Numbered from the stretch's first letter, positions 18,473-63,509 are shown. The stretch is 64,000 nt of DNA from IMGVR_UViG_3300036715_004471:248001-312000; one strand, 5' to 3'. Numbers and translations: made by a program. Notes: generated by a model from the sequence alone, not told the origin.

Positions 18473-20080
18473 TTACCCAAAAATCTTGTAGTTGTTAAAT
18501 GTAACAGCTTCGTAACCTTCTTCCATACCTTTCCTATATAGAGGTCTGCAATTACCTTCTTTATCAATGTAAGTCTTATGAACCGGTAGTCCAGTGTGTG
18601 AACAAATTGGATGTTCACTGGAAGCACTTTTAATCATTTTGTTGCAAGTTGGTTCGGCAGAAGCGTTAGCGACCTTGCCTGATAATCCTTGAACAAAAGC
18701 TTGGAATCCAAAGGCATATGCTTTTGCATCTCTAGAATTTGCTAATACATTCAAAGCATCTTCAGCACCTTCATGATTTCCTTCACTTAGTGCTTTCTTA
18801 ATATTAGTAATTAATTCACTTGGTTTAAGATTATACACAGGTGAGGCGGAGGCAGCAGCTTTGAAGTCAGAATGGTTACTCTTAACTAGAGTGTTTATGG
18901 TTTCTTCGCTGAAAGAACCAACAGTTCCATTACATAGCATTACAGATGGTGAAGAGATCTTACCATTTGCAACCTTAATTGGCACAGTAAATCCTACACG
19001 ACCATTATTTAATGCAACGCTCAAATAAATTGCGCCCGGCTCTGATCCTGATACTGTAATTTGCGGATTTTTATATCCAAATCCAAGAATTTCACGAGCA
19101 ACACATTCGCGAGCTAATTTTACAACTTGTTCTCCAAATTGTAACATTGCCGTACCTTGTGGCGAAGCAAATTTCTCTTCAAATGATTGGAATTCATCAG
19201 ATTTTGGTAGTTCAACATCTTTTACAGATGCTTCTGCCATCTTTTGACCAACAATCTGATTGTGAAAGAATTCTGACTTTCCCTGTCTAGTAGCATTAAG
19301 TTTAGTCAATGCTAATTCAGCCGCACTAATTTCTCTATTTTCAGTAGATGCTTGAGTTAGTAAACTCAAGATAGATGTTCCGCTAGCTTTTAATTTGCTA
19401 CCAGCATTAGTGGTAACATACTTTTTAACATTAGTATGATCCAAATCTTGTGGACCAGTATTACCCATAAAAACAGATGCTTCTGAAAGTTTTCCGCGAT
19501 GAATTTCTACTGGAACATAAAATCCAGTAACACCTTTTGGAGTTTCGTATTCTGCTCTAATCATTAAAAACTTATCATTACCATCTTCCATTACTAATGA
19601 AGATGGTCTCAAGTTCCAAGAATCTAAAGTAGAAGCAACGGTTTTTATAGCTTGATTAGCCAAACTTTGATTATACATCTTAACAGGGGAACCATCAAAA
19701 ACACTATTTAAAGCATTTGATAAAATTTGATCTCCTACCTGATAAGGGTTAAGCATGGCAGCATCATCTCTTTCATAAGTCTTGATATTAGGCTCATTAT
19801 CAATGATACCTAACTCATCTTGAAAAAGCTCAGCCACTTTGTTATTACGTGAATACAATTTATTGTATAGTGATTTGAAATCAGCCTTTTTAATAAAAAG
19901 TGTGTTATTGGATGCCATTTTTTCGATTACTCTAGACATGGATCCCAAAGTCTGATCTTGGGGGTAGAGGTTCACGTACTTAGCCAATTTAGCCGCAAGA
20001 ATTGGTGTAGCCAATTTTTCATTGTCGTCTATTGATTTAGCTAGTGAACTTACTAATTGCTGAATTTTTTCGAGACTCAT
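18473..20080 (-). CDS. large hypothetical protein with C-terminal Cys/His motif
   Basis: 535 aa; CNK...CSHTGLPVH...CRP. Confidence 0.75.
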   Translation of the reverse strand: MSLEKIQQLVSSLAKSIDDNEKLATPILAAKLAKYVNLYPQDQTLGSMSRVIEKMASNNTLFIKKADFKSLYNKLYSRNNKVAELFQDELGIIDNEPNIKTYERDDAAMLNPYQVGDQILSNALNSVFDGSPVKMYNQSLANQAIKTVASTLDSWNLRPSSLVMEDGNDKFLMIRAEYETPKGVTGFYVPVEIHRGKLSEASVFMGNTGPQDLDHTNVKKYVTTNAGSKLKASGTSILSLLTQASTENREISAAELALTKLNATRQGKSEFFHNQIVGQKMAEASVKDVELPKSDEFQSFEEKFASPQGTAMLQFGEQVVKLARECVAREILGFGYKNPQITVSGSEPGAIYLSVALNNGRVGFTVPIKVANGKISSPSVMLCNGTVGSFSEETINTLVKSNHSDFKAAASASPVYNLKPSELITNIKKALSEGNHEGAEDALNVLANSRDAKAYAFGFQAFVQGLSGKVANASAEPTCNKMIKSASSEHPICSHTGLPVHKTYIDKEGNCRPLYRKGMEEGYEAVTFNNYKIFG

Positions 20081-20632: not shown

Positions 20633-20755
20633 TTACAAATCCAATACCATAACATCCATTACACAGTGTAATAGATTTCTTTCAAATACCTTTGTGAAAT
20701 TATATTTCTTTAAAGGGTTTTTGGCGTAATTTATACAGGGTTTTACTAATTCCAT
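20633..20755 (-). CDS. possible 40-aa ORF (MELVKPCINY...)
   Basis: TAATG-coupled to the upstream stop; below the ORF-track cutoff; no recognisable motif. Confidence 0.3.
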   Translation of the reverse strand: MELVKPCINYAKNPLKKYNFTKVFERNLLHCVMDVMVLDL

Positions 20756-21195
20756 TACCAAAAAGCCCTTATCTTAAGTTTTCTCACTATTTCATTAAAT
20801 CTATTTTCATCTGAAAATATTTCATATAAATTAGTTATCTTCACAGTGTCTTCGCCACCCCGAACTGAATAAAATATTCCAAGTGCTGTTAACATCTCTC
20901 TTGATTTCTCTATTAACTTTTTACGATCTTCGACGGCTTGATTGATAGAGTTAATAGATTTGACTTTATCTTTTAATCTTTGTATATCTCGTCCAAGGAG
21001 TGAAAATATTTCGGTAGATTCTTCTTTAGTCAATTCATTTGCTTCGGATGCCTCAGTTGCCTCTTTCATAAGATTGCCTATATAAGTTATTGCAACTGTT
21101 AATCCTTTTGTGTCATGCCTGCTATGTGCAGGCATTTTCCATAATTTCTCTATGATTTCGCGAAACTTACTGCTCATTTCATGGAATTCACTCAT
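20755..21195 (-). CDS. hypothetical protein ending ...EIVRKLKIRAFW
   Basis: C-terminal motif shared with 21200-21385 and 26685-27104. Confidence 0.75.
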   Translation of the reverse strand: MSEFHEMSSKFREIIEKLWKMPAHSRHDTKGLTVAITYIGNLMKEATEASEANELTKEESTEIFSLLGRDIQRLKDKVKSINSINQAVEDRKKLIEKSREMLTALGIFYSVRGGEDTVKITNLYEIFSDENRFNEIVRKLKIRAFW

Positions 21196-21199
21196 CTTA

Positions 21200-21385
21200 T
21201 TACCAAAAGGCTTTCATCTTGAGTTTTCTAACTATTTCATCAATCTTACCCTCATCAAGTAAGATGTCATATAATACTCTAACGCTTATCGAAACGCCAT
21301 CATTAGGTATCTCTAATTTATCTAGCAATTCTGCTTTTTTAGGATCATAATGATAGTTTGAACTTACATATCCATCACTGAACAT
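21200..21385 (-). CDS. small hypothetical protein ending ...EIVRKLKMKAFW
   Basis: Shared C-terminal motif. Confidence 0.75.
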   Translation of the reverse strand: MFSDGYVSSNYHYDPKKAELLDKLEIPNDGVSISVRVLYDILLDEGKIDEIVRKLKMKAFW

Positions 21386-21388
21386 AAA

Positions 21389-21829
21389 TCACCATTTTGA
21401 TTCTCTTATCTCATCCATCTTTTTGAGAATATCTTTGATCTTCTCATCATTCTCAATAATCTTGCGAATTTTCTTCCTAGCTCCACCGTAAATCTTTTTA
21501 CCATTCTTATAGTCAACGTTTCCGTTCAAAGATTTGGTAATAGAGCTTTGATTGACATTTAGCATTTTGGCTATTTCCATTTGGGTATAACCATCAGCAT
21601 ATAATCTAATTACTTCTCTTTGTCTTGGTGTCAAAAGGGTATCAACTACTCTCCAAAATTCTTTTTTGAGTTGATCTTCAAGATTCATTAAATCCTCATT
21701 GTATTCAAATGGATTAAGCCTATTGTAAATACTATCTTCGTTACAAAAAGCCTCCATCATATCGTTTGAGCATACGGTTTCTAATAGAACCCATTGGTAT
21801 TTGTCTGATCTATTTTTTCTACGTTCCAT
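21389..21829 (-). CDS. sigma70 region-4-like HTH protein lacking region 2
   Basis: LTPRQREVIRLYADGYTQMEIAKMLNVNQSSI; GAGGAG before MERRK; 146 aa. Confidence 0.75.
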   Translation of the reverse strand: MERRKNRSDKYQWVLLETVCSNDMMEAFCNEDSIYNRLNPFEYNEDLMNLEDQLKKEFWRVVDTLLTPRQREVIRLYADGYTQMEIAKMLNVNQSSITKSLNGNVDYKNGKKIYGGARKKIRKIIENDEKIKDILKKMDEIRESKW

Positions 21830-21831
21830 AT

Positions 21832-22101
21832 TCACTCCTCGATTAAATCGTTTTCTGAAACTTGAACCCAAGTAGTTTCAGACATACCTTTATCAGTTAT
21901 TTCAAAACTTCTATCTTTTCCGCCCAGTGCAAAATGCTTCTCAGTAGTTTCAATTAGCCAACCTTTCTTTATTAATTCTTCGGCTAACTTATGTGTAGCA
22001 GGTCTACTGTCACACCATACTGATCCATTCATTTTGCACACTTTACACCCTGCAATTAAGTCTAGAAATACCTTTTGCTCTTCCGTCAATACATGTTCCA
22101 T
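21832..22101 (-). CDS. small winged-helix-like protein
   Basis: AEELIKKGWLIE...SFEITDKG wing pattern; GAGG before ATG 22101. Confidence 0.5.
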   Translation of the reverse strand: MEHVLTEEQKVFLDLIAGCKVCKMNGSVWCDSRPATHKLAEELIKKGWLIETTEKHFALGGKDRSFEITDKGMSETTWVQVSENDLIEE

Positions 22102-22133
22102 AAAACCTCGAACTATCATATACCAGATAGTAA

Positions 22134-22889
22134 TTACCCCCTGACAACAAAAGACAAAGATTCGTATTCATTCTTAGCGAAGAACTCGTCAATGTCTTTA
22201 TAATTATCAGGTAAGTAAAAATTTTGAATATTGGCATGCTTGCCAAATTTATCTATGATGCGTTTTCTCCCCTTCTCTCCCGCTTCATCACTATCTAATA
22301 GCAAGATTATATTATCAGTGTATCTGCTAATGACGGAAAATTGATAGGCAGTCATATTAGAATTACCTAAACCGACAACATTTTTCATTCCCTTCTCATG
22401 AGCCTTGATTACATCAAATTGACCCTCTACCACATACACTAGATCATTATCTATGATAGATTGCTTATTTTCATACATTCCAAACAAATAATTACCTTTA
22501 GTAAAAACAGTATTCTTATATTTAGAAATGTTTTTAACTTTTCTTTCATTATCTGGAAGTAGCGACCTTCCAACTATAGCTACGATATTTCCATAAGCAT
22601 CCTTAAAAGGCATTACTAATGGATAATCATCGAAATATGAAAAGTTTACTGTGCGAGGATAAAGAGAATCTTCAATTTCTCTTGAGTAGAAGATTTTCGT
22701 TTCCCTAAGTGAATCTTCTCCAACCAAAGAAGTTAAAGCTTTCAAATTATGAAGATTGGGGAAATATCCAAATTGAAACTTATCCTGACTTTCAGTACTT
22801 AAACGATAGTCAAGATAAGTCTTGCAATCTTGTGCTTCTGGATAGTTATGTAGTAAAAATTGACAAGAACTAATAATTTGATCAAACAT
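22134..22889 (-). CDS. dnaG: DnaG-type primase catalytic core (no zinc-binding or helicase-binding domain)
   Basis: YL..R...F.FGYFP, IVGR, KYKNT...KGNYLFG, TOPRIM VVEGQFDVI and LDSDEAG. Confidence 0.9.
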   Translation of the reverse strand: MFDQIISSCQFLLHNYPEAQDCKTYLDYRLSTESQDKFQFGYFPNLHNLKALTSLVGEDSLRETKIFYSREIEDSLYPRTVNFSYFDDYPLVMPFKDAYGNIVAIVGRSLLPDNERKVKNISKYKNTVFTKGNYLFGMYENKQSIIDNDLVYVVEGQFDVIKAHEKGMKNVVGLGNSNMTAYQFSVISRYTDNIILLLDSDEAGEKGRKRIIDKFGKHANIQNFYLPDNYKDIDEFFAKNEYESLSFVVRG

Positions 22890-22916
22890 AAGTTAAACTT
22901 TCTTAACACTTAGGTT

Positions 22917-23261
22917 TTAGAATTCATCATTTATATTTTTAAGTTTTTCTTTCAACATATTTTTGAATGGTAGACTTAAATGATCCAACGGTTTAGAACA
23001 GGAGGCGCAAACCACGTCATCATTAATTACTTTTGGTCTACCCTCACGTTCACATTTTTTGCATTTCACAGAATATGAGAGATTTTTCTTTTGCTTAAAT
23101 TGCTTTAAATTCTTCATTTGAATTTTAGCAAAATGACTGACATTATCTATTTCTCTATCGCACAAAGAACAATATACTTTATTATCTTTATCTTTGGGAT
23201 CCAGGTATGGTTCTTGTGTTTTTCCGCATCCCTTATTTGTACAACTCATAGCAAACGGCAT
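22917..23261 (-). CDS. zinc-ribbon protein
   Basis: Four Cys pairs (CTNKGC, CSLC, CKKC, CASC). Confidence 0.7.
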   Translation of the reverse strand: MPFAMSCTNKGCGKTQEPYLDPKDKDNKVYCSLCDREIDNVSHFAKIQMKNLKQFKQKKNLSYSVKCKKCEREGRPKVINDDVVCASCSKPLDHLSLPFKNMLKEKLKNINDEF

Positions 23262-23264
23262 AAT

Positions 23265-24272
23265 TTAATCCTTATCTAAATGATCTATGTCACTTGGATC
23301 GTAAGTTTGATGACCATTCAACACATTGATTAACCTAGATATTATCTCTACATCTTCTGGATAAGTAACATCTATTATTACTTTTTGAGATCCTACACCA
23401 TTAACACCTAGGTTAGGTATCTTTATTTCATCTTTGTTTCTAGAACAAGGGGGAATTATTAATTCTTTTTCTCCCATAATGGTTTTTACTTGAACATTAA
23501 TACCCTGTAACGCATCTAGAAAAGATAGATTTAAGTGTGAAACAACATCTTGTCCTTCCAACGATAATCCTTCTTCTGGAATAACTGTTAAATGAAGGTG
23601 TGCTTCTGAATATTGATCCATGCCCATAAAGCTATTAACATAATGTCCAAAACCATTCAGCCTCAAAATGTTTCCTGACACTACGCCAGGTGGCACATTG
23701 ACACTTCCAGAAACCTGAGTACTAATAGTACCTTTCGATGAACAAGTGCGACATTGATTAATAGGGATTCTTCCAAAACATTTATCACATGTCCTGGTAA
23801 ACATCATGTTTCCCTGTTTACCAATAATTTGCCCTTTTCCTCCACACTTATCACATCCATTATTAGATTGTATCTGTCCTTGACCATTACAATCTGCACA
23901 CTTACCATTTCTGGTAAAAGAAATTTCCTTTTGACAACCCAAAATAGATTCTTTGAATGATAAGGTGATTTGAAGTACAATATGTTCTATTTGTGTCTGC
24001 TGTCTTCCTCCAAAAGGATTTATATTGATTCCAGGAAATCCTTGAAATGGATTAAACCCAGATTCTTGTATCACTGGCTCAGGATCGGTGCCTTTTCCAT
24101 TAACAACACACCGATAAGCTTCATTAATCTTTTTGAATTTATTTTCAGCACCATCTTCTTTATTAACATCAGGATGATACTTTTTAGTAAGTTCTCTATA
24201 TTTCTTTTTAGCATCTTCCGGAGAAGTTTCCGGAGATAATTCTAATATTGAATATGCTTCTTGCAAATTCAT
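23265..24272 (-). CDS. dnaJ: DnaJ chaperone (type I)
   Basis: J-domain KYHPD, G/F stretch, four CxxCxGxG-type repeats, C-terminal domain. Confidence 0.92.
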   Translation of the reverse strand: MNLQEAYSILELSPETSPEDAKKKYRELTKKYHPDVNKEDGAENKFKKINEAYRCVVNGKGTDPEPVIQESGFNPFQGFPGININPFGGRQQTQIEHIVLQITLSFKESILGCQKEISFTRNGKCADCNGQGQIQSNNGCDKCGGKGQIIGKQGNMMFTRTCDKCFGRIPINQCRTCSSKGTISTQVSGSVNVPPGVVSGNILRLNGFGHYVNSFMGMDQYSEAHLHLTVIPEEGLSLEGQDVVSHLNLSFLDALQGINVQVKTIMGEKELIIPPCSRNKDEIKIPNLGVNGVGSQKVIIDVTYPEDVEIISRLINVLNGHQTYDPSDIDHLDKD

Positions 24273-24826
24273 TTGCGTTTACCTTTAGCCTTACCTGTTA
24301 ATACAAATGCATAATACAGAGCAACGGCAATACCGTCAGCCCTATCTCTATTTTCTTCTTTTATGCCACCCTTATTCTTACCCTTAGTGATTCTCTCATA
24401 GGGAAACGTAATTCCTAAATGTTTTGCCACAAGCTCCGGCATATCTTCTTTTTTTGGCAGCACTTTAGAAGTTTTCAATCCATGTCTGATTGTCATAACA
24501 TTGAACAACCCGGGATTGGATTTCAAATAGTCATAACTAGTTAAACAAACCATACGATTGAATGTTGTCAACATTACTACAGTTGTAGCCGTACTTTTAG
24601 GCATGAATTTTATTAAATCTTCTACGCCAATATAATCTGGTTTTGATTTATTGATAATCTCCTGAATTTTATCCCTAGTATCTACTATACGATCAACTAT
24701 TGAACCTATTTTCACAGGTTTGAAATAACCCGAATCAATATACTTGATAGTGTTATCTTCTTGAATTTCTAACTCACACCATCCAATTGTCGAACTAGAC
24801 ACGTCAAAGCCAAGCACTGTCTTCAT
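24269..24826 (-). CDS. RuvC-like Holliday junction resolvase
   Basis: LGFDVSSSTIGW, IGVED, C-terminal DRADGIAVA. Confidence 0.8.
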   Translation of the reverse strand: MKTVLGFDVSSSTIGWCELEIQEDNTIKYIDSGYFKPVKIGSIVDRIVDTRDKIQEIINKSKPDYIGVEDLIKFMPKSTATTVVMLTTFNRMVCLTSYDYLKSNPGLFNVMTIRHGLKTSKVLPKKEDMPELVAKHLGITFPYERITKGKNKGGIKEENRDRADGIAVALYYAFVLTGKAKGKRK

Positions 24827-25434
24827 TTTATCTCCTTACTTTTCAAGAACGAAACAATGCTCTCTAATTCTACAAGTGTAGCATTATTTTTTATTCTGTT
24901 GGCTTTATGAGATATAACGACAATATTACCTTTAACGTATCCTTTTTCTGGAACAATACGATCCAAAGATGGCGAATCATCTTTGGTTTTTCCTACATTT
25001 GTTACAAGTAACATACCAAATATGGGACATTTACCATCGCTCGGGTAAATGTCTACTACATCTTGTTTGGTAATATCAAATATTATGCCAGAAGCTTTAG
25101 AGCGCTGTTTAGCCGAGTAATAAATAAATCTACACGGATCTTCTTGTCTTTTTTTATGTATCCATTGTTTATGAAACGCTTTGCGCTCCAGACTACTATC
25201 GTAAATACGCAGTTTTTCTTTATTCTTTTCTCTATATTCTTTATTTTTCTTACTTATATCATTTTTGTATTGTTGATAGTACTCTTTTGCTTGCGCACTT
25301 TTTGCTTCTTTCCTGCGATCATTTTGTTGACGAGCATGGGCTCGACACAAAGAACATAATTTGAAATATTCACCATTTGGCTTTGCAAATGAGGAATCAT
25401 TAAATTCTCCACGACAAGTATTACATATTCTCAT
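24823..25434 (-). CDS. HNH-variant homing-type endonuclease
   Basis: N-terminal CxxC pairs; CPIFG...SPSLDRIVPEKGYVKGNIVVISHKANRIKN. Confidence 0.75.
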   Translation of the reverse strand: MRICNTCRGEFNDSSFAKPNGEYFKLCSLCRAHARQQNDRRKEAKSAQAKEYYQQYKNDISKKNKEYREKNKEKLRIYDSSLERKAFHKQWIHKKRQEDPCRFIYYSAKQRSKASGIIFDITKQDVVDIYPSDGKCPIFGMLLVTNVGKTKDDSPSLDRIVPEKGYVKGNIVVISHKANRIKNNATLVELESIVSFLKSKEIK

Positions 25435-25486
25435 GTCTGAATGATATAATATTGGTAGAAGTTTCGGCAAATATTACTATAGGTTA

Positions 25487-25494
25487 ATATATCA
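25487..25494 (-). promoter_or_regulatory. TGATATAT putative extended -10 element
   Basis: Directly after the SSB terminator, upstream of the endonuclease-ruvC-dnaJ run. Confidence 0.45.
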
Positions 25495-25496
25495 GG

Positions 25497-25537
25497 AAAA
25501 AGAAAAAGGGGTCCTGAGTTCGCTCAGGACCCCCTTT
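25497..25537 (-). terminator. rho-independent terminator after SSB gene
   Basis: Minus strand GGGGTCCTGAG-CGAA-CTCAGGACCCC followed by TTTTTCTTTTT. Confidence 0.9.
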
Positions 25538-25557
25538 GATGTTATTGTATCAGTTGA

Positions 25558-26283
25558 TTATGCTTGGTTATCATAATCTGGAAATGATTCTTCTAATTCT
25601 TCATCATCTGCCATGCTTACTGGAGCTGTTTTAGTGTTAGCTTTTACAACTGGTTTAGCAGCCGCCTTTTTTGCTGCTGCCGGAGCGGCAGTTGGAATAG
25701 CTTCGCCCTCACCAAAAATCTTATCCAATCTCTTTTGGACAACATCTGAAGTTGGAGGAGTTACTCTACGCTTCAAATCATCAAAGTCAACATCATCTTT
25801 GACCTTTTGATCTTCTGCCGAAAGAGGCTCTTTTGGAATTGGTTGTACTGAGTAATAACCAGTAGCTCCACCGTTTTTATCAACTACGATGTTAAGATCG
25901 TACTTGGTAGGATCGCCCCAACGGTCAGCTTTTCTGGCTAGTTTTCTAATTTGAGAGAAAACCGCAAAGGAAACATCCAAAATCTTGTAAGTACCAGTCT
26001 TACGGCTCAAGACACCATACAACCAACGAAGCTTGGCTTTATCACCAGAGGCACAAACAGGGCAGCTACCGTGAATGGCTGAGCATGGAACCTTTTGACC
26101 AAAATCTTTTGGATTTGAAGGGTCTTTCTTCACCTTATGTACAGAATATTGGAATGGATTGGTTAGCAATCTTAATTCGTTATCACCTTCATCCAATCTC
26201 ATGAAGAGGTCTTTGGAATTGGTGGTCTTTTTGTCACTGTAAATCTCGTCGTTATAAGAAATTTCACCGAATGTTGATGTCAT
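25558..26283 (-). CDS. single-stranded DNA-binding protein (T4 gp32-like)
   Basis: LDEGDNELRLL, C..IHGSCPVC zinc site, YKILDV, GDPTKYDL, acidic aromatic tail. Confidence 0.7.
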   Translation of the reverse strand: MTSTFGEISYNDEIYSDKKTTNSKDLFMRLDEGDNELRLLTNPFQYSVHKVKKDPSNPKDFGQKVPCSAIHGSCPVCASGDKAKLRWLYGVLSRKTGTYKILDVSFAVFSQIRKLARKADRWGDPTKYDLNIVVDKNGGATGYYSVQPIPKEPLSAEDQKVKDDVDFDDLKRRVTPPTSDVVQKRLDKIFGEGEAIPTAAPAAAKKAAAKPVVKANTKTAPVSMADDEELEESFPDYDNQA

Positions 26284-26365
26284 TTTGATCTCCTACTGTT
26301 ATCTATTTTGTACAAAACGTACTTGTTTCTTTTTAACACATTGATCGTATTTACGACCTTATCAA

Positions 26366-26671
26366 TTATCTTGATGCAAACTTGACGAAGCGGGTACGAG
26401 TACGATCGTTAGCTCTTCCGAATCTAACTGATACGCCTCTTGTGCGTAATCTATTTGCTATCCTATTTATAACCACTCTTAGTGCACTTGGCGAACCAGG
26501 GAGGTTATTTACTTTTGTCTGACTTCTGTTGTAAACTCTAGCTAGAATAGAGTCTAATTGTGTCATTGTGCCTCTCCAATTATGAGAGGTCTCAAGTGAC
26601 CTTAGAACGCCTTCTAGAACCAAGTTATCAACCGAATTTGTCTTACCATTAGATGTCATTTTATTGCTCAC
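26366..26671 (-). CDS. small basic hypothetical protein
   Basis: Arg-rich 101-aa ORF. Confidence 0.6.
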   Translation of the reverse strand: MSNKMTSNGKTNSVDNLVLEGVLRSLETSHNWRGTMTQLDSILARVYNRSQTKVNNLPGSPSALRVVINRIANRLRTRGVSVRFGRANDRTRTRFVKFASR

Positions 26672-26684
26672 TTTCCTATTTTTA

Positions 26685-27104
26685 TTACCAAAAAGCTTTC
26701 AAATTATTGAATCTTTTTATCAACTCTGGATCACAGAGTCCTAATGCAACATGCCTGTAATCCGCATAATCACATTCTTGATAGTTATCTGCAATTGCTA
26801 ACGTTTTGCCTTCCGAAATATCTCTTGTAAAAATTACGTTAGCGCCCCAAATACTTATGTTTTTATTGACGGTAATATTAACTTCTTCAAACATCGAAGA
26901 AACTTCTATTATTTGAATGGGATTCATTACCCAATAATCAACTACTAAGTCCCACCTATCAACTAGCATTTTGGTTTCGATTAAAAATCTTTTGAATCCC
27001 TTTTTATAATCTAATCCATTTGTATAATTATACAGAGTAATACTGTTTGTAGATTTGGTTTCGGCAGCTTCCAGCAAGATGCCGAGGTCTTTCAATACAT
27101 CCAT
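26685..27104 (-). CDS. hypothetical protein ending ...IKRFNNLKAFW
   Basis: Shared C-terminal AFW motif. Confidence 0.7.
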   Translation of the reverse strand: MDVLKDLGILLEAAETKSTNSITLYNYTNGLDYKKGFKRFLIETKMLVDRWDLVVDYWVMNPIQIIEVSSMFEEVNITVNKNISIWGANVIFTRDISEGKTLAIADNYQECDYADYRHVALGLCDPELIKRFNNLKAFW

Positions 27105-32025: not shown

Positions 32026-32033
32026 ATATATCA
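32026..32033 (-). promoter_or_regulatory. TGATATAT putative extended -10 element overlapping the dnaE stop
   Basis: Recurring boundary octamer. Confidence 0.4.
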
Positions 32034-35000
32034 ATCATCTTGCTCTTCTTCAAGATCAATTAACCCCTCATCGTATAAAGAGTCTTCAATTTGTTCGAGT
32101 AAATTGCGAGTTTCGGTAAGTTTAGTGATAGCTTCTTGAACAAGTTTCACTTTCGAATCTTTCAGATTTACCTTTTTGGCTTTAAGGTCATCTGGCAAAC
32201 TTGGAATCATAGAAATATTGAACATATCTTCTAGAATAAGACCCATATCATCTTCATAGTTATTGGTATTTCCGCAAAAACTTAATGCAATACCCACATC
32301 AAATACTGCTTTACTATGAATTTCTTTAAGTCTATTTTGTACAATCTTCCATCTATCAGGAAAAATAGTACAAAAACACTGTTCGCCATAAGCATCTTCG
32401 ACAATTGCTTTGATCATAGATTGACCATAATATTTACTGGTTTCTTTCTTGACTTTGAATTCAAAGAAACTCCTAACCAAAGCTTTGATAGGATACAATC
32501 TGGTTTTGTCTTTTGCTCTTTTAACATCTGCTATTGTCTTATGCTCATCCTTAAAGAACTTGCCATAAGCTTCAGCAGGTTTACAAACGAAAGATTCTCC
32601 CAAATAATACTGTTCCAAAGCATACAACTCTGACAGCTTCCATTCTGCTTCTTTTGGCCAAGGATAAATAAATTCTTCTTTGTTAAGATCATGCTTCTTT
32701 AACCAAACTTGCAATTTCTTTCTATAATCTGAACAATATAGATAAATTGATTTTCTGGAAATTCCGAAATGGTCCATACTACCAGCAGCAGCTAATGCCT
32801 GAATAGCATTTGCTCTAACTTTTCTAGAATCTACTCTAACCATGAAATCGAAAAAGTTATTGAATGGTCTTTTTTCAATAATATCTTTGATTGCATCTTC
32901 GCCAACAAACTTCAAAGCATCCAAACCAGTTAACAACTTATTGTCTTTGGATATGGTGTAACTTAATTGTGATTTGTTAATATCTGGCGGAACAATCTTA
33001 ACATTATGTTGCCTTAACTCCTTCTTGATTTTTTCAATATTAGCCTTAGCATCAGGGGTGTTAGATTTAACTTCTGCCATTAAGTTTGCCATCAAGAACT
33101 CTACTGGATAATGAGCTTTTAAATAAGCTGTCTTATAACTAGTCATAGAATAAAGTACACTGTGGGACATATTAAAACCATAGCCCTGGAACTTATCTAC
33201 AACCTCATCCCAAATCTTCTTAGCGATTTCCTCACTAATATCATTCTTAACTGCATCATTAATGAATTCCAATCTCCATTGTTGAGCCTTTTTGGGATTC
33301 TTTCCTTTTTCTTTCGTTAATTTACGAAGACGATCTGCGGAATGCAAGTTCCAACCGGCAACATCTTGCGCTAAATACATTAAAGATTCTTCATACAAAC
33401 CAAATCCATAAGTATTATTAAACGCTCTTCCTAAGGAAGGGTGCAATAATGCGAATGGCTTTTTACCATCTTTGGTTGCAATAAAATCGCTACGCATATC
33501 TCTTGCAGACGGTCTTGCTAAAGAATTGACATAGCTAATATCATTGACGGATTTTGGTTTGATCTTACGACATAAATCAATAGTACCACCACTGGTACCT
33601 AATTGAAATACACAGAATGTATTTCCATGAGAAATTAAGTCGTAAGACAATTGGTCATATTCTTCATAATTCAAAGGATCTGGTGGGAGAGGCTTGCCAG
33701 ATTCCTTAATTAGTTGTAAGGTTTGTCCAATGATATCTAGAGTCGAAAGACCCAAAGTATCCATTTTAACTAAACCATTTTCTTCTGCTTTATCTTTATC
33801 GTATTCGATAGCCAAAGCACCATCTTTATCTTTTCTTAACGGAACTAATCCTGTCAATGGTCTAGCAGAAATAATAATACCACCAGCATGAGTAGACCAT
33901 GCCCTATATTTGCCACAGATTTCCTTATATCTAATGAATTCAGGATACTTTTTACAATATTCCGTGAACAAAGGTACTTTGTTCAAAGCGTCATCAATAG
34001 AATGAATATCTGCTGGAAGACAATCTGCAACATCATTTCCAATTCTAATAGCCTCCTCACGGGAGCCACCTAATTCACATGATCTTGCAATATCTCTAAC
34101 ATAAACTTTTGGTGTAATGGTATTAACGTTAGAAACGTGAGCTACGCTATCTTCGCCATATTTCTTTTTTAAGTAATCTTGTACTAATGCGCGTCCTGAT
34201 GGAGCAAAATCAGTATCAATATCAGGAAAACTTGATTTTTCTTTATTGTGGAATCTGGCAAAAATCAAGTTATACTTAATTGGATCTGCTTGATGAATTC
34301 CTAACAAGAAGGCAATTAAAGAACCTCCTACTGAACCACGACCTTCACCAACTGCTATATCATGGCGACGTGCCCAATCAATATAATCTGCCACAATTAA
34401 CATATAGCTAGAAAATCCATGATATTCTAGTACGTCCAATTCTTCTGCAATGCGTTTATTGTAAATATCACGTTCTTCGTCAGAAAGAATATTAACTCTA
34501 GAATCAAACTTAATTTCGCACCTATAACGAAGAAATAATTTGTCTTCATCTAGTTTTTGTAATTCTTCTGGCAGTTTAGATGCCCAAGTACGAAAAACTA
34601 AATAATCAACCTCATCTTTAACAGGGAAAATTGGCAATTCTTTTCCAGAAGGATTAGAGTATTTTGGATCTATCCAATTGGGGAATTCGCATAGAGAAGC
34701 AAAATGTACACTGTTGGCACAAACTTGTTCAGCAAATTCTTCACCGAAATTTCTAGAAAAGAAGTTTTTTACTTCATCACCAGACTTGAGATAAAAATCT
34801 GGAACATTATATTTAAGCCTGAAATTAGAATATGCCGGCTGATGCGATCCAATTGCTAAGAAAACATCATGGATATCATGATCTTCTTTCTTAAGGTAAT
34901 GAGCATTACAAGCAGCAACTAAACGAATATTATATTTCTTACCTAATTCAATTAATCTACGATTAAGGAATCTTTGATCAATTTTATCAGAATAGAAATT

Positions 35001-53293: not shown

Positions 53294-54610
53294 TCACTTG
53301 AAATACTTATCTGTGTCCACTATCTTACTGGCGTTAAGAATATTTTTATCCTTAACTAAACAACTCAAGGCACTTTCTATGTCTTTTTCTGTTGGAGCCT
53401 TACGATTATGAGCTAAAGCCTCAAACATTGCCGAAATATAAAGTTCCTTTAAGTAAGCATAAGAAAACGCTGACTTCTCTGCAAACTTAGCTAGTTCTCG
53501 ACACTTCTTAACAGACAAGAGTGCTCCGAACCATCTCTTAAGATATATATAAGCCATTTCTTGGTTTGGAAGAGGAATTTCGAATTTTCTATCAAATCTA
53601 GATGGTCTATCAGTAATATTAGATTTTAATTTCTTAACATCATTGGCTGTCGCAATAACTAACAAACCATTTTTTGCAGAAATACCATCCATCAAATTCA
53701 AAAACGAAGAAATATCTACATTCTTTTCTAACATAGAATCCAAATCCTCAAAATACAATAATGAGGGGCTTTGTTCTTCTGCATAAGAAAAGGCTTCTCT
53801 TACCGCCTCGTCATTTGCTCCAGGAACAATAGTAACTGGTTTGAAATTGTATAAAGACATAACTGTCTTTATAATAGATGTTTTACCGTTACCTGGTTTG
53901 CCATATAACAAAATACCACGCTTCCAAGGTATTTTGTTATCTATGTAAAACTGTTTAGAAGCCAAAAAATTCTCTACCAAATTCTTTAATTCATTCTTGA
54001 TACTATCAGGTAAGAATAGTCCATCCCAAGTATGATCTTTGGTATATGGCACATCTTCACCATCAACAACCCTAATATGAAGATTACTTCTATCTCTACT
54101 CTGAACCCATTTATCAAATGAATTTCTCAGAGCAACATATCCTTCATAATTTTTATTTGAACACACAACAAAGAAACTTACTTCATCTTCTTGTTGGTTT
54201 CCCTTATGAAATAAAGCGGCATGAATGAATTCTAAATTCTTATGCTTGATCAAGAAGACACCTTGAACGAAGAACTTTTCAAAATCATGCTCCGTTTGCC
54301 AAGAGATAATAGAATCTTTATACAAACATTCTACCTTGATATCGCTTTCCTCGCAAAATTTCATGAATTGACCATCAATAATAATTCTATTATGAATGTA
54401 TCTATTTATTCCTACAGTATCTTTGAGAGCAGATTTGAAATTATCCTCCACCCATTTCATTAGATCAATAAAATTAGCAGTAGGTCTCGTGTCCTCCAAC
54501 TTATTGAATAAGCCACTATCCATTAGAGCTAATAATTTCTCTTTAGATAGATGTTCTTGGCTTTCCAAATCAGAAGGGGTTAAGTAGTCTTTATTTTCTT
54601 TGACACTCAT
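53294..54610 (-). CDS. AAA+ ATPase (BCS1-like) with unknown N-terminal domain
   Basis: RGILLYGKPGNGKT, LYFEDLD, LNLMDG, DRPSRFDR. Confidence 0.88.
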   Translation of the reverse strand: MSVKENKDYLTPSDLESQEHLSKEKLLALMDSGLFNKLEDTRPTANFIDLMKWVEDNFKSALKDTVGINRYIHNRIIIDGQFMKFCEESDIKVECLYKDSIISWQTEHDFEKFFVQGVFLIKHKNLEFIHAALFHKGNQQEDEVSFFVVCSNKNYEGYVALRNSFDKWVQSRDRSNLHIRVVDGEDVPYTKDHTWDGLFLPDSIKNELKNLVENFLASKQFYIDNKIPWKRGILLYGKPGNGKTSIIKTVMSLYNFKPVTIVPGANDEAVREAFSYAEEQSPSLLYFEDLDSMLEKNVDISSFLNLMDGISAKNGLLVIATANDVKKLKSNITDRPSRFDRKFEIPLPNQEMAYIYLKRWFGALLSVKKCRELAKFAEKSAFSYAYLKELYISAMFEALAHNRKAPTEKDIESALSCLVKDKNILNASKIVDTDKYFK

Positions 54611-61607: not shown

Positions 61608-62330
61608 TTATAATTCTGGATAATTATCCAATAACTTCTTAATTTCTTGACATTTAACAATTGAAAATTGGTTGTTTTCTCTAACTCCAGATTCCATATC
61701 TATATAATATGGTATTTCATCTGAATTTTCTTTTTCAATCAATTTAACAATTTTGACCACATTATCTGGTTTTATTCCACCAGCAAAACCAGTAAAAATA
61801 TCTGGGTCAGGAGGCGCTACTTGTTCAATTTCTCTTCCAAACCCACCAGACGAATCATTTAACCAGGAAAGAGATATCTCTCCTGTCGCTTGCATACGCT
61901 CCAAAAAGACTTCATTAAACTTCTTTTTAGTTCCGTTTTTTTGCAAAATGATACAATAGTTGTATTTCGAAGCCACTCTCAAGATGGAATTTGATAGTTG
62001 TTTGTGATCAGTATACTTCTTAATATTCAAATTCAATTGAATACGATTTGACTTATCACACAATTCCAAAACATGTAGATCTTCTATCAAAAATCTGTCT
62101 ATAGAAGATCCACATAAATGGATAGAATGGTAAACTTTATTTTCATCTGCCCAAGATAAGAATTTCTTACAAAGATCATGACCCGGGTATCTAGTATGAG
62201 TATCATTCTTAGAATCACTGTATAGAACACTAAATTCATAAGGAACATTAGCGTCCTTAAATTCCAATAGATCCTCAAATTTTGTTTGACGGTCTACTCC
62301 AACAAATGATACTAAAACTAGATTTTTCAT
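61608..62330 (-). CDS. TrpF/PRAI-like TIM-barrel protein
   Basis: HLCG, RIQLN, DSSGGFG, FAGGIKPDNV, IDMESGVR. Confidence 0.65.
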   Translation of the reverse strand: MKNLVLVSFVGVDRQTKFEDLLEFKDANVPYEFSVLYSDSKNDTHTRYPGHDLCKKFLSWADENKVYHSIHLCGSSIDRFLIEDLHVLELCDKSNRIQLNLNIKKYTDHKQLSNSILRVASKYNYCIILQKNGTKKKFNEVFLERMQATGEISLSWLNDSSGGFGREIEQVAPPDPDIFTGFAGGIKPDNVVKIVKLIEKENSDEIPYYIDMESGVRENNQFSIVKCQEIKKLLDNYPEL

Positions 62331-62911
62331 AAAACCTCGTCAATTATTCCATATTCTAATGCTTGTTTGACATCCAACCAAACATCTCTTGTACAATCTT
62401 GTTTAATCTTTTCTAATGGGTGACCAGTGTGTTTTGCCAACATCTTCATAATATTATCATTATTGTCTTTTAAAAATTGATAATAGTTCTTTGAATTAGT
62501 CATATCATGACCGGGGATTGGGAATCCGGCTTGAATACCATGAATCATGATTTTAGAATGTTTGAAAGCACATCTTTCTCCAGGAGTGCCTGCGGCTAAA
62601 ATTACTGCTGCCGCAGAATAACATTTACCCAAACAAACTGTTCTTACAGGAGATTTAATCATTTGCATGACGTCGTAAATATTGGTTAGCCCAGCAGCAT
62701 CACCACCATTACAATGTAAGTAGATAGATATTTCTTCGTCAGAAACATTATCATAATACAACAATAAAGCGGCAAGATCAGAAGCAGACTGCTTAGTCAC
62801 ATTCTCATTCAAAAAGATAATTCTATCCTTAGATAGTTTAATATAAGTTTCTGCATATCCAGGAAACTTAGGAGGCATTGCGTGCGCATGTTCGTTAAAA
62901 TTGATTGACAT
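62327..62911 (-). CDS. clpP: ClpP peptidase, catalytic triad intact
   Basis: CLGKCYSAAA (Ser), IMIHG (His), TRDVW (Asp); AAAGG before ATG 62911. Confidence 0.92.
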   Translation of the reverse strand: MSINFNEHAHAMPPKFPGYAETYIKLSKDRIIFLNENVTKQSASDLAALLLYYDNVSDEEISIYLHCNGGDAAGLTNIYDVMQMIKSPVRTVCLGKCYSAAAVILAAGTPGERCAFKHSKIMIHGIQAGFPIPGHDMTNSKNYYQFLKDNNDNIMKMLAKHTGHPLEKIKQDCTRDVWLDVKQALEYGIIDEVL

Positions 62912-62924
62912 GAAACAATACCTT

Positions 62925-63509
62925 TCACTTATTGAAGGAAACAACTTTATCAATCAAACCATATTTGGCTGCTTGATGGCAAGTCATAAACACTCTTCTA
63001 TTAAAATCTTCTGTTACTTGTTTATAAGTCTTACCAGAAGTTTTGGCAATGATTTCCATCATTTTTTTGTTGTCTCCCATAAACTGGTCTAGAACTTTTT
63101 TGGCGTCTGTTAAATCTGAATAATTAACCCAATCGTGAGTCAATTGATTAATGGCAATTACCGAATTTTTCGTAGCAAATCTCATACCGGGAGTGCCCGC
63201 ACACAGAATGAGTGCAGCTTCATCCATCGCAGATCCAATACACACAGTTTCGATGGGTGCTTGTACTAAACACATCATGTCATAAACCATGAGGACATTT
63301 CTAATGTCACCGCCTTCTGAATTTATGAAAAGAGTTATTTTAGTATTAGGATCTTCTGCATCCTTCAAAAGCAAAGTGGCTACAATATCTGTAGCCAATT
63401 TATCATCTATCACATCACAAACAAATAATATTCTATCATTTGAAAGCTTTTGATAGATATCAATAGGGATATCCCCATGCTCCGTAGCTTCTGTTACAAG
63501 AGTATTCAA
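62925..63509 (-). CDS. ClpP-like subunit lacking the catalytic triad (ClpR-like)
   Basis: CIGSAMDEAA (Ser to Asp), IAINQ (His to Asn), NRRVF (Asp to Arg); INSEGG retained; TTG start. Confidence 0.88.
   Translation of the reverse strand: MNTLVTEATEHGDIPIDIYQKLSNDRILFVCDVIDDKLATDIVATLLLKDAEDPNTKITLFINSEGGDIRNVLMVYDMMCLVQAPIETVCIGSAMDEAALILCAGTPGMRFATKNSVIAINQLTHDWVNYSDLTDAKKVLDQFMGDNKKMMEIIAKTSGKTYKQVTEDFNRRVFMTCHQAAKYGLIDKVVSFNK

What the first reader, a model, noticed from the sequence alone, without database searches (positions are those of the whole stretch)
20755..27104. Shared C-terminal [K/L]-x-[K/R]-A-F-W tag on otherwise dissimilar proteins: candidate phage degron or sorting signal
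Seen: three ORFs of 146, 61 and 139 aa with no evident N-terminal similarity end NLYEIFSDENRFNEIVRKLKIRAFW*, VLYDILLDEGKIDEIVRKLKMKAFW* and LGLCDPELIKRFNNLKAFW*. Between the first two, several DNA differences are synonymous (GCT/GCC, CTT/CTC, GTG/GTT), pointing to selection on the peptide rather than a DNA repeat. Known: C-terminal basic-hydrophobic tails act as degrons (MuA RRKKAI for ClpX) and as PDZ/Prc or export signals. Inference: a portable terminal module routing phage proteins to a common partner, plausibly the Clp system (this window has ClpP and a ClpR-like subunit), an adaptor, or a compartment.
Basis: partly seen in the sequence, partly recalled or inferred. Interest (0 to 1): 0.8.

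Follow-up and report, generated by a model that had tools for sequence, protein, structure and literature searches.

The report
Clade-wide C-terminal phage protein tag
In a group of giant bacteriophages, about 40 to over 100 small, mostly unrelated proteins per genome end in the same few amino acids (…K-L-K-A-F plus exactly one more residue), which looks like a shared address label read by one still-unknown partner.

Summary
The window lies in a 446-kb IMG/VR jumbo-phage record. About 40-45 of its ~700 ORFs end in [KR]-Φ-x-K-Φ-K-[A/V/S]-F-x, or in the variant K-Φ-K-T-Φ-Φ-x-F-[S/T]. Fully fetched relatives have about 115 of 761 and 38 of 702 such ORFs. One sister lineage has none.

The Phe is always the second-last residue. 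[LMI][KR][AVSC]F is followed by exactly one residue 15, 67 and 8 times in the three genomes, and almost never by 0 or 2-8 residues. Synonymous codons follow genome usage and orthologs keep the tail while their bodies diverge, so selection acts on the peptide. With tails removed, most families show no BLAST or HHalign similarity. Two predicted bodies differ in fold. Some bodies occur with and without the tail.

The best reading is a portable C-terminal recognition motif that needs a free carboxyl end and is read by one common partner. An AAA+ unfoldase or protease is the leading guess, but the partner is unproven.

That pair is also present in the tail-less lineage, and no ClpX, Lon, PDZ or proteasome gene was found. 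No matching report turned up in the few literature searches run.

The parts
20755..21195 (-). ORF of 146 aa carrying the tag. Its last 30 aa form a module shared with the next ORF.
   Evidence: The ortholog in L012 also ends KIRAFW.
20758..20784 (-). Tag of the 146-aa ORF: RKLKIRAFW, followed by TAA
21200..21385 (-). ORF of 61 aa carrying the tag. It lies directly downstream of a sigma-70 region-4-like gene.
   Evidence: Orthologs in L012, L014, L026, L042 and L047 all end [KN]KAFW.
21203..21229 (-). Tag of the 61-aa ORF: RKLKMKAFW, followed by TAA
26685..27104 (-). ORF of 139 aa carrying the tag, lying between the RecA-like and SSB-like genes. The predicted body is alpha/beta.
   Evidence: Orthologs at 20-68% identity keep R131, K136, F138 and W139 invariant. 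AlphaFold2 gives pLDDT under 50 for residues 132-139.
26688..26714 (-). Tag of the 139-aa ORF: RFNNLKAFW, followed by TAA
3167..4144 (-). Possible variant member. A 325-aa glucosaminidase/endolysin-like protein ending HKKFLLKFI, with Phe second-last.
   Evidence: Pfam PF01832 and a PHROG endolysin family. Homologs in G003 and G005 end RKFLLKF[VI]; there is none in G004. Only 4 of 8 tail positions fit the second flavour, so membership is uncertain.
53294..54610 (-). Context only. A classic-clade AAA ATPase (438 aa) whose presence or absence matches that of the tag. Weak candidate reader.
   Evidence: Pfam AAA, E 7e-19. Best solved relatives are YjoB, VAT and Cdc48. Present in G001, G002, G003, G005 and G009; absent in tail-less G004 and G007. 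However, 63 other genes share the G003+G005, not-G004 pattern.
62327..63509 (-). Context only. Two adjacent ClpP-family genes, one with the catalytic triad and one ClpR-like. No link to the tag is shown.
   Evidence: Both are conserved in tail-less G004.

Best explanation
The KAFW endings are three local examples of a strictly C-terminal short peptide motif that is specific to one jumbo-phage clade.
- Flavour 1: [KR](-8)-Φ-x-K(-5)-[LMI](-4)-K(-3)-[A/V/S](-2)-F(-1)-x(0).
- Flavour 2: [KR]-[LI]-K-T-Φ-Φ-x-F-[S/T].

The motif sits at the end of a C-terminal helix on about 40 to 115 small accessory proteins per genome, and most of these have unrelated bodies.

I read it as a portable recognition tag. 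The invariant Phe, the free alpha-carboxylate exactly one residue later and the flanking lysines would dock into one common partner, giving many different proteins the same fate or address. The most likely class of reader is an AAA+ unfoldase or protease. In that case the tag would act as a C-degron that times the removal of early or accessory proteins, or as a tether that brings whatever the variable body binds to that machine.

Shown: the motif, its strict register, peptide-level selection, its presence on unrelated bodies, and its restriction to the clade.

Inferred: that a single reader exists, that it needs the free C-terminus, and that it is an AAA+ machine.
For: Register: [LMI][KR][AVSC]F is followed by exactly one residue in 15, 67 and 8 ORFs of G000, G003 and G005. 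It is followed by 0 or 2-8 residues only once in those genomes. The internal background is 23-30 per genome, the same as in tail-less G004.

Position-specific enrichment in G003: F(-1) z=19.8, K(-3) 11.8, L(-4) 10.7, K(-5) 11.4. Phe is second-last in 8.7%, 19.8% and 9.5% of ORFs, against 2.1% in G004.

Peptide-level selection:
- Synonymous codons track genome usage.
- AARGCNTTY is enriched only in frame at the end.
- Only 20-43% of tail genes have a 4-nt stop/start overlap, and the last-residue spectrum is the same in all junction types.

Orthologs keep the tag while their bodies diverge. Identity over the last 9 aa is 0.56 against 0.37 for the rest.

Unrelated bodies:
- About 141 BLAST clusters among about 190 tail proteins.
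- HHalign probability is under 1% for most family pairs once tails are removed; with tails kept, the only match is the tail.
- The two AlphaFold2 bodies differ: beta-hairpin repeats versus alpha/beta.

Portability:
- Homologs swap flavour 1 for flavour 2.
- A 348-aa G003 protein has the tag while its G000 and G005 homologs lack it.
- A 77-aa G005 protein is a fragment of a 1206-aa protein plus the tag.
- Outside the clade, the widespread repeat family (29,599 hits) has the capping helix but not the KAF-x end.

In the 139-aa protein the invariant tag residues lie in a low-confidence stretch (pLDDT under 50), as expected for an exposed linear motif.

Precedents from the literature:
- ClpX C-terminal degrons, including the basic MuA tag ...RRKKAI (PMC12723719).
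- The SspB C-terminal segment that binds the ClpX N-domain (10.1101/2022.11.06.515074).
- The hydrophobic-Tyr-X C-terminal HbYX motif (PMC12352868).
- The interchangeable C-terminal clamp-binding tails of T4 gp43, gp55 and gp33 (PMC2988020).

A Cdc48/VAT/YjoB-like AAA ATPase has the same presence/absence pattern as the tag.
Against: - No reader has been identified. The phage encodes no ClpX, Lon, PDZ or proteasome family member.
- The ClpP/ClpR pair does not co-vary with the tag.
- The AAA correlation rests on a single phylogenetic split and is shared by 63 other genes.
- In the 88-aa repeat protein the terminal helix is modelled with high confidence (pLDDT 80-94), so there the helix is probably part of the fold.
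- Families F2, F5 and F6 may be remotely related (HHalign 55-84%), and many members lie in tandem arrays. Part of the spread is therefore duplication rather than independent acquisition.
- No expression, stability or binding data exist. Only DNA runs were found to hold the region.
Confidence: 0.5

Rival explanations
1. The tail proteins form one hugely expanded, fast-diverging paralog superfamily. The tail is simply its last helix, kept for folding or self-assembly, with no external reader.
For: - Tail genes lie in tandem arrays with very short gaps (median 0-6 nt).
- Neighbours are often BLAST-level paralogs.
- F2, F5 and F6 show remote HHalign similarity without tails.
- The helix is confidently modelled in the 88-aa protein.
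- A strand-cap-helix pattern often precedes the tail.
Against: - Most family pairs show no similarity without the tail.
- The two modelled bodies have different folds.
- The tag appears on a fragment of a 1206-aa protein and on one member of an otherwise tail-less ortholog group.
- A purely structural helix would not forbid C-terminal extensions, yet almost none of about 190 members has 0 or more than 1 residue after the Phe.
- The tag is low-confidence in the 139-aa model although invariant among orthologs.
Confidence: 0.18
2. The tail is a peripheral membrane anchor, or an anchor to another polyanionic surface. It would be a basic, aromatic C-terminal segment comparable to the MinD or FtsA membrane-targeting sequences (comparison from my own knowledge).
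For: - Net charge of the last 10 residues is about +2.2, against +0.4 for other ORFs.
- The hydrophobic or aromatic end is A-F-[L/I/W].
- A possible member is a peptidoglycan hydrolase that must reach the envelope.
Against: - The helical hydrophobic moment of the tails (0.26-0.33) is no higher than that of other C-termini (0.28).
- A membrane helix does not explain why exactly one residue must follow the Phe.
Confidence: 0.1
3. One reading: the tag is a degron for a proteolytic system built on the phage's own ClpP/ClpR-like pair.
For: - A ClpP paralog with the Ser/His/Asp triad and a ClpR-like paralog lacking Ser and His lie at window 62327-63509.
- Basic C-terminal ClpX degrons exist, for example MuA (PMC12723719).
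Against: - Both genes are conserved at 51-53% identity in G004, which has no tagged proteins.
- The phage has no ClpX/ClpA-type ATPase; its only AAA_2 hit is also AAA_5/MoxR-like.
- The tag does not resemble LAA-type tags.
Confidence: 0.08
4. The tail docks its bearers onto a DNA-bound or cytoskeletal hub, as T4 gp43, gp55 and gp33 dock onto the sliding clamp. Candidates are a clamp or the phage tubulin homolog.
For: - T4 provides the precedent of interchangeable C-terminal tails on unrelated proteins (PMC2988020).
- The window's tag genes sit in the replication/transcription module: RecA-like, SSB, primase, a sigma-like factor, a weak clamp-loader hit and a DnaE polymerase.
- A conserved 535-aa core protein next to the clamp-loader-like gene ends KIFG in all four genomes.
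- A tubulin-family gene is part of the core genome.
Against: - T4 tails are hydrophobic and acidic, whereas these are basic.
- No DnaN family match was found in the phage.
- The candidate hubs are also present in tail-less G004.
- Most tagged genes lie in accessory arrays far from the replication module.
Confidence: 0.08
5. The conservation is at the nucleic-acid level. It would be a junction signal such as translational coupling, a ribosome-binding context, a terminator or a recombination boundary that happens to be read as K-A-F-x.
For: - Tail genes are tightly packed and 20-43% overlap the next start by ATGA.
- Terminator-like hairpins are in excess in one array region: 24 found against 9.4 ± 3.0 in shuffles.
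Against: - Synonymous codons at K, L, A, F and R positions match genome usage.
- Substitutions are conservative at the protein level (K/R, L/M/I, A/V/S), never to acidic residues.
- 38-43% of tail genes have no start within 15 nt downstream.
- Flavour 2 keeps the chemistry but not the nucleotides.
- The motif is not enriched in the other two frames.
Confidence: 0.03

Closest known systems
C-terminal sliding-clamp-binding tails of phage T4 gp43, gp55 and gp33
   Same: Short motifs at the extreme C-terminus of unrelated phage proteins that route them to one partner. They are interchangeable between proteins (PMC2988020).
   Different: The T4 tails are hydrophobic and acidic and occur on a handful of proteins. 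Here the tail is basic (+2.2), has an invariant second-last Phe and occurs on 5-15% of all ORFs. No clamp family was detected in the phage.
ClpX C-terminal degrons (C-motif 1, the ssrA ...ALAA tag; C-motif 2, the MuA ...RRKKAI tag)
   Same: Terminal peptides, portable to other proteins, read together with the free C-terminus. C-motif 2 is basic with a small or hydrophobic end (PMC12723719).
   Different: Those degrons have no invariant aromatic residue. The tag here ends A-F-x, not AA or AI. No ClpX is encoded and the phage ClpP/ClpR pair does not co-vary with the tag. Degradation has not been tested.
HbYX motif (hydrophobic-Tyr-any residue) of proteasome activators
   Same: An extreme C-terminal motif with an invariant aromatic residue at the second-last position and a nearly free last residue, read with the carboxylate (PMC12352868).
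   Different: Phe replaces Tyr. The bearers are small, diverse proteins rather than ring ATPases. No proteasome-family gene is in the phage.
SspB-type adaptor tether (a C-terminal segment binding the ClpX N-domain)
   Same: A short segment at the very C-terminus that links a variable cargo-binding body to an AAA+ machine (10.1101/2022.11.06.515074).
   Different: The SspB segment follows a long disordered linker. Here the tag directly continues a helix of the body. Binding has not been tested.
Poxvirus ankyrin/PRANC and other viral families that combine a variable body with a constant C-terminal hook (from my own knowledge)
   Same: Expanded, fast-evolving accessory gene families that share only a C-terminal element hooking them to one cellular machine.
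   Different: PRANC is a folded F-box-like domain of about 60 aa on one repeat family. Here the shared element is a 6-9-residue peptide on many unrelated bodies.

Membership tests
ClpX C-motif-2 degron (MuA-like) | Located at the extreme C-terminus | tested here: met
   All significant profile matches end at the C-terminus.
ClpX C-motif-2 degron (MuA-like) | A run of basic residues followed by a small or aliphatic end (RRKKAI) | tested here: inconclusive
   K(-5), K(-3) and A(-2) fit. An invariant Phe at -1 and interleaved Leu are not features of the MuA tag (PMC12723719).
ClpX C-motif-2 degron (MuA-like) | ClpXP-dependent degradation conferred on a reporter | not testable with these tools
   Needs experiment.
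ssrA-like C-motif-1 degron | Ends in LAA or AA-COOH | tested here: not met
   Tails end A-F-[L/I/W/T/S].
HbYX proteasome-docking motif | Hydrophobic-Tyr-X at the extreme C-terminus | tested here: inconclusive
   The pattern is small hydrophobic-Phe-X. Phe is 100% and Tyr is rare (one KAYI case).
HbYX proteasome-docking motif | A 20S or HslV-type partner is available | tested here: not met
   No PF00227 match in the phage genome. The host is unknown.
T4-type clamp-binding C-terminal tail | Shared by unrelated proteins at their extreme C-termini | tested here: met
T4-type clamp-binding C-terminal tail | Hydrophobic and acidic composition | tested here: not met
   Net charge about +2.2. No Asp or Glu from -5 to 0.
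MinD/FtsA-type membrane-targeting sequence | C-terminal amphipathic helix with a high hydrophobic moment | tested here: not met
   Moment of 0.26-0.33, no higher than other C-termini at 0.28.
PDZ class II ligand | Hydrophobic residues at -2 and 0 with a free carboxylate; -1 is permissive | tested here: inconclusive
   Position -2 is A/V and position 0 is hydrophobic in 79% of tails. But the invariant position is -1, which is atypical, and no PDZ_2 match exists in the phage.
Single homologous protein family (full-length paralogs) | Detectable similarity outside the shared tail | tested here: not met
   About 141 BLAST clusters. HHalign is under 1% for most family pairs without tails; the exceptions are F2 with F5 and F6. 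Pfam and PHROGs find nothing shared.

The most novel reading that the evidence does not exclude
These jumbo phages run their own proteome-wide C-terminal address code. A 6-9-residue tag with an invariant second-last Phe marks 5-15% of phage proteins for one phage-specified machine. A candidate for that machine is the Cdc48/VAT-like AAA ATPase, which is found only in tag-bearing genomes. This would give the virus a private C-degron or sorting pathway that governs the fate of its whole accessory, host-takeover gene set.
Probability: 0.2. Interest if true: 0.9.

Novelty: new variant of a known kind. Interest (0 to 1): 0.78.

Why it matters
Shared terminal tags are known for a few proteins, such as ssrA-type degrons, the T4 clamp-binding tails and HbYX. 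A single C-terminal motif on up to about 115 otherwise unrelated proteins of one virus, absent from a sister lineage and from sampled bacteria, would be a new scale of viral protein addressing.

It gives a handle on the "dark matter" of jumbo-phage genomes, because one pull-down with one peptide could reveal the common fate of a tenth of the proteome.

It could also supply a compact, portable tag for controlling protein stability or localisation in the still unknown host group. The motif is sharply defined and easy to mutate, so the hypothesis is directly testable.

Tried and rejected
Searches that found nothing useful:
- Pfam and PHROGs on 27 members and on the larger tagged proteins found no family.
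- A word-based homolog search with the 139-aa protein found only itself and one 68% relative.
- The tail profile against solved structures found nothing relevant.
- An ESM Atlas look-up of the 146-aa protein gave scores under 0.7, which is uninformative.
- VIA-align of the 88-aa model gave no match with Z of 5 or more.
- Foldseek of the 139-aa model gave weak HK97-capsid-like hits (TM 0.4-0.6, rmsd over 10 Å). I do not trust these.
- Literature searches for KAFW and for phage C-terminal motifs or degrons found no matching report.
- No RNA run holding the region was found.

The representative-library search with the repeat-family profile was swamped by long multi-repeat proteins. It was still useful for showing that outside homologs lack the KAF-x end.

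Explanations and candidates rejected:
- A DNA-level or gene-junction explanation.
- The phage ClpP/ClpR pair as a co-varying partner.
- Phage-encoded ClpX, Lon, PDZ, proteasome and DnaN as readers; none was found.
- An amphipathic membrane helix, on the hydrophobic-moment result.

A sigma-70 promoter scan gave no excess in array or structural regions, so expression timing could not be inferred.

The phyletic-profile search for a reader left 64 candidates, too many to name one.

Full report
**1. The observation**

The three minus-strand ORFs exist as described:

| Window coordinates | Length | C-terminus | Stop |
|---|---|---|---|
| 20755-21195 | 146 aa | RKLKIRAFW | TAA |
| 21200-21385 | 61 aa | RKLKMKAFW | TAA |
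| 26685-27104 | 139 aa | RFNNLKAFW | TAA |

The first two share a 30-aa C-terminal module at 50% identity. The third shares only the last 7-11 residues with them.

**2. Where the window lies**

The window is bases 248001-312000 of a single 446,541-bp IMG/VR virus record. Its genes are phage-like:
- a RecA-like recombinase, a gp32-like SSB, a primase, a RuvC-like nuclease and DnaJ;
- a DnaE-type polymerase and a sigma-70 region-4-like factor;
- two ClpP-family genes and a tubulin homolog.

No cultured phage is close; the best RecA match is about 29% identical. The RecA-like gene does find 40 related IMG/VR loci, many on contigs of 340-480 kb. The sequence occurs in microbial-mat, lake and sediment metagenomes.

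**3. Scale of the phenomenon**

In the window's own genome:
- AFW and AFL are the two commonest C-terminal tripeptides of about 700 ORFs.
- [KR][AVC]F[WL] ends 16 ORFs, against 0.045 expected from its internal frequency.
- A profile of the last 22 residues matches only C-termini.

Two flavours exist:
- Flavour 1: Φ(-14)...Φ(-10)-x-[KR](-8)-[YLIF](-7)-x-K(-5)-[LMI](-4)-K(-3)-[A/V/S](-2)-F(-1)-x(0).
- Flavour 2: [KR]-[LI]-K-T-Φ-Φ-x-F-[S/T].

Homologous proteins swap one flavour for the other, so both are versions of one element.

I fetched three relatives in full. Counts come:

| Genome | ORFs | Tagged ORFs | Phe second-last | [LMI][KR][AVSC]F + exactly 1 residue |
|---|---|---|---|---|
| G000 (window's genome) | 702 | about 40 | 8.7% | 15 |
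| G003 | 761 | about 115 | 19.8% | 67 |
| G005 | 702 | 38 | 9.5% | 8 |
| G004 | 750 | none | 2.1% | 0 |

- A few further G000 members were lost by my crude gene caller, so its total is about 40-45.
- The only G004 ORF that fits the pattern is a conserved 535-aa core protein that I do not count as a member.
- Phe makes up 4.0-4.8% of all residues in these genomes.
- G001, G002, G006, G008 and G009 also have matches to the tail profile. G007, of the G004 lineage, has none.

The register is strict. [LMI][KR][AVSC]F is followed by exactly one residue 15, 67 and 8 times. It is followed by 0 or 2-8 residues only once in these three genomes. Internal occurrences number 23-30 per genome, the same as in G004.

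**4. Peptide or nucleic acid?**

The evidence points to the peptide:
- Synonymous codons at the conserved K, L, A, F and R positions follow genome-wide usage.
- The DNA motif AARGCNTTY is enriched only in frame at the C-terminus: 52 times there in G003, against 44 internal occurrences over all frames.
- Replacements are conservative at the protein level (K/R, L/M/I, A/V/S) and never acidic.
- Only 20-43% of tail genes overlap the next start by ATGA, and 38-43% have no start within 15 nt.
- The last-residue spectrum is the same in all junction classes.

A coupling, terminator or recombination signal is therefore very unlikely.

**5. Conservation and distribution**

- Orthologs of all three window proteins in related contigs keep ...KAFW while their bodies drop to 20-36% identity. 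In the 139-aa family, R131, K136, F138 and W139 are invariant.
- Over 25 inter-genome homolog pairs, the last 9 residues are 56% identical and the rest 37%.
- No tagged G000 gene has a homolog in G004.
- A scan of IMG/VR for the back-translated KLKAFW-stop pattern found 84 stretches. Loci where it ends a called ORF carry ORFs with BLAST hits to the clade's proteomes. Loci without any such hit have no ORF ending KAFW.
- The same pattern in 80 prokaryote genome loci never ends a called ORF.

The tag is therefore specific to this phage clade as far as the data reach.

**6. One family or a portable module?**

*Evidence for a portable module:*
- With the tail removed, about 190 tagged proteins fall into about 141 BLAST clusters.
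- HHalign between eight family profiles without tails gives probabilities under 1% for most pairs. With tails kept, the only aligned stretch is the tail itself.
- Pfam and PHROGs find no common family.
- The two AlphaFold2 models have different bodies.
  - The 88-aa protein is a stack of beta-hairpin repeats with a terminal helix at 75-86 (pLDDT 79).
  - The 139-aa window protein is alpha/beta with a terminal helix at 126-136. Its last eight residues have pLDDT under 50 (pTM 0.70).
- The hairpin-repeat family is huge outside the clade (29,599 hits). Outside members carry the same capping helix (...SQEEFExWLK...) but continue or end differently. Only the last half-dozen residues are clade-specific.
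- A 348-aa G003 protein is tagged while its G000 and G005 homologs are not.
- A 77-aa G005 protein is a piece of a 1206-aa protein plus the tag.

*Evidence that duplication also contributes:*
- Many members are tandem paralogs.
- F2, F5 and F6 may be remotely related (HHalign 55-84%).

The tag is nevertheless not confined to one fold.

**7. Mechanism**

What needs explaining is the combination of several features:
- a strict C-terminal register;
- an invariant aromatic residue one position from the end;
- flanking lysines, giving a net charge of +2.2 over the last ten residues against +0.4 for other ORFs;
- exposure in at least one model;
- occurrence on many bodies.

This is the signature of a short linear motif read together with the free carboxylate by one binding pocket. 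Known readers of that kind are mostly AAA+ unfoldases and proteases or their docking sites. Examples:
- ClpX degrons, including the basic MuA tag (PMC12723719);
- the SspB tether (10.1101/2022.11.06.515074);
- HbYX (PMC12352868);
- in phage T4, the sliding clamp, which binds interchangeable C-terminal tails of gp43, gp55 and gp33 (PMC2988020).

I therefore favour a tag that gives the accessory proteins a common fate. That fate would be timed degradation, or tethering of whatever they bind to an unfoldase.

The phage offers no ClpX, Lon, PDZ, proteasome or DnaN family member. It does have three classic-clade AAA ATPases. The one in the window (53294-54610; best solved relatives YjoB, VAT and Cdc48) is present in six tag-bearing genomes and absent from both tail-less ones. 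That is one phylogenetic split, and 63 other genes share the G003+G005, not-G004 pattern, so it is only a lead.

**8.

The ClpP/ClpR-like pair is real. One paralog keeps Ser, His and Asp; the other has Asp and Asn in place of Ser and His. But the pair is conserved in tail-less G004 and has no phage-encoded Clp ATPase partner. A compartment signal is unlikely to be general, because the core replication and recombination proteins lack the tag.

**9. Other rivals**

- A MinD-like membrane helix is weakened by an ordinary helical hydrophobic moment and by the register argument.
- A purely structural last helix does not explain why extensions are forbidden.
- A clamp or tubulin hub is possible but unsupported by composition or phyletic pattern.

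**10. Verdict**

The portable-peptide reading is supported, the Clp link is not, and the partner is unknown. The motif is new. Its kind, a shared C-terminal recognition tag, is known, but its scale is unprecedented to my knowledge.

Noticed in passing
G000 bases about 20,000-127,000 (outside the window; loci L207-L212): GC content rises from 44% to 61% across this stretch, against 31-37% in the rest of the record. ORFs here are short and on mixed strands, yet a few have homologs in G003 and G005. IMG/VR classes the record as a provirus. This could be foreign or host DNA, a chimeric assembly or an unusual genome segment.
   Followed up: partly
G000 131157-132305 (-), locus L001:5157-6305: A phage-encoded class-I release factor of RF2 type, with SPF and GGQ motifs and PCRF plus RF-1 domains. 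It is embedded in an array of flavour-2 tagged genes. It is present in G003 and G005 but not G004. It may hint at a host that recodes TGA.
   Followed up: partly
G000 367305-368804, 382566-383477 and 384804-386192 (loci L005, L221): A PARP-like protein (WGR + PARP regulatory + catalytic domains), an ADP-ribosylglycohydrolase and a NAMPT-type nicotinamide phosphoribosyltransferase. Together they look like an NAD/ADP-ribose toolkit. All are absent from G004.
   Followed up: no
G000 344406-345338, 348403-349503, 389550-390164, 392323-392724 and 431735-433297: An RNA-repair-like set: a Pnkp-like kinase/phosphatase, an RlaP nucleotidyltransferase, an RNA ligase, a 2H phosphoesterase and a Ro60/TROVE-vWA protein.
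   Followed up: no
G000 169005-170414 (-), locus L214: A tubulin/FtsZ-family protein of 469 aa (PF00091, E 4e-17). It is conserved at 63-72% identity in all four genomes.
   Followed up: partly
window 18473-20080 (-): A 535-aa core protein without any Pfam or PHROG family, lying next to a weak clamp-loader-like gene. It ends ...K-I-F-G in all four genomes, including tail-less G004. I could not tell whether this is a coincidence or the original bearer of the motif.
   Followed up: partly
window 21389-21871 (-): A 160-aa sigma-70 region-4-like protein, 66-92% identical across the four genomes, immediately upstream of the 61-aa and 146-aa tagged genes. It ends ...ESKW.
   Followed up: no
L039:4264-6474 (IMGVR_UViG_3300036893_000036): Eight tandem genes of the hairpin-repeat family, all ending ...FERLM[RK]LKAFW. 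This is a striking local expansion of tagged paralogs.
   Followed up: partly
L006 (G000 388001-406000): Terminator-like hairpins are in excess in this array-rich region: 24 found against 9.4 ± 3.0 in shuffles. A structural region has 11 against 8.3 ± 3.3. Sigma-70-like promoters show no excess in either region.
   Followed up: no
window 32031-35546 (-): The replicative polymerase is a bacterial-type DnaE (Pol III alpha; PHP, alpha, finger and HhH domains; 1171 aa). No DnaN-family clamp was detectable in the phage genome.
   Followed up: partly
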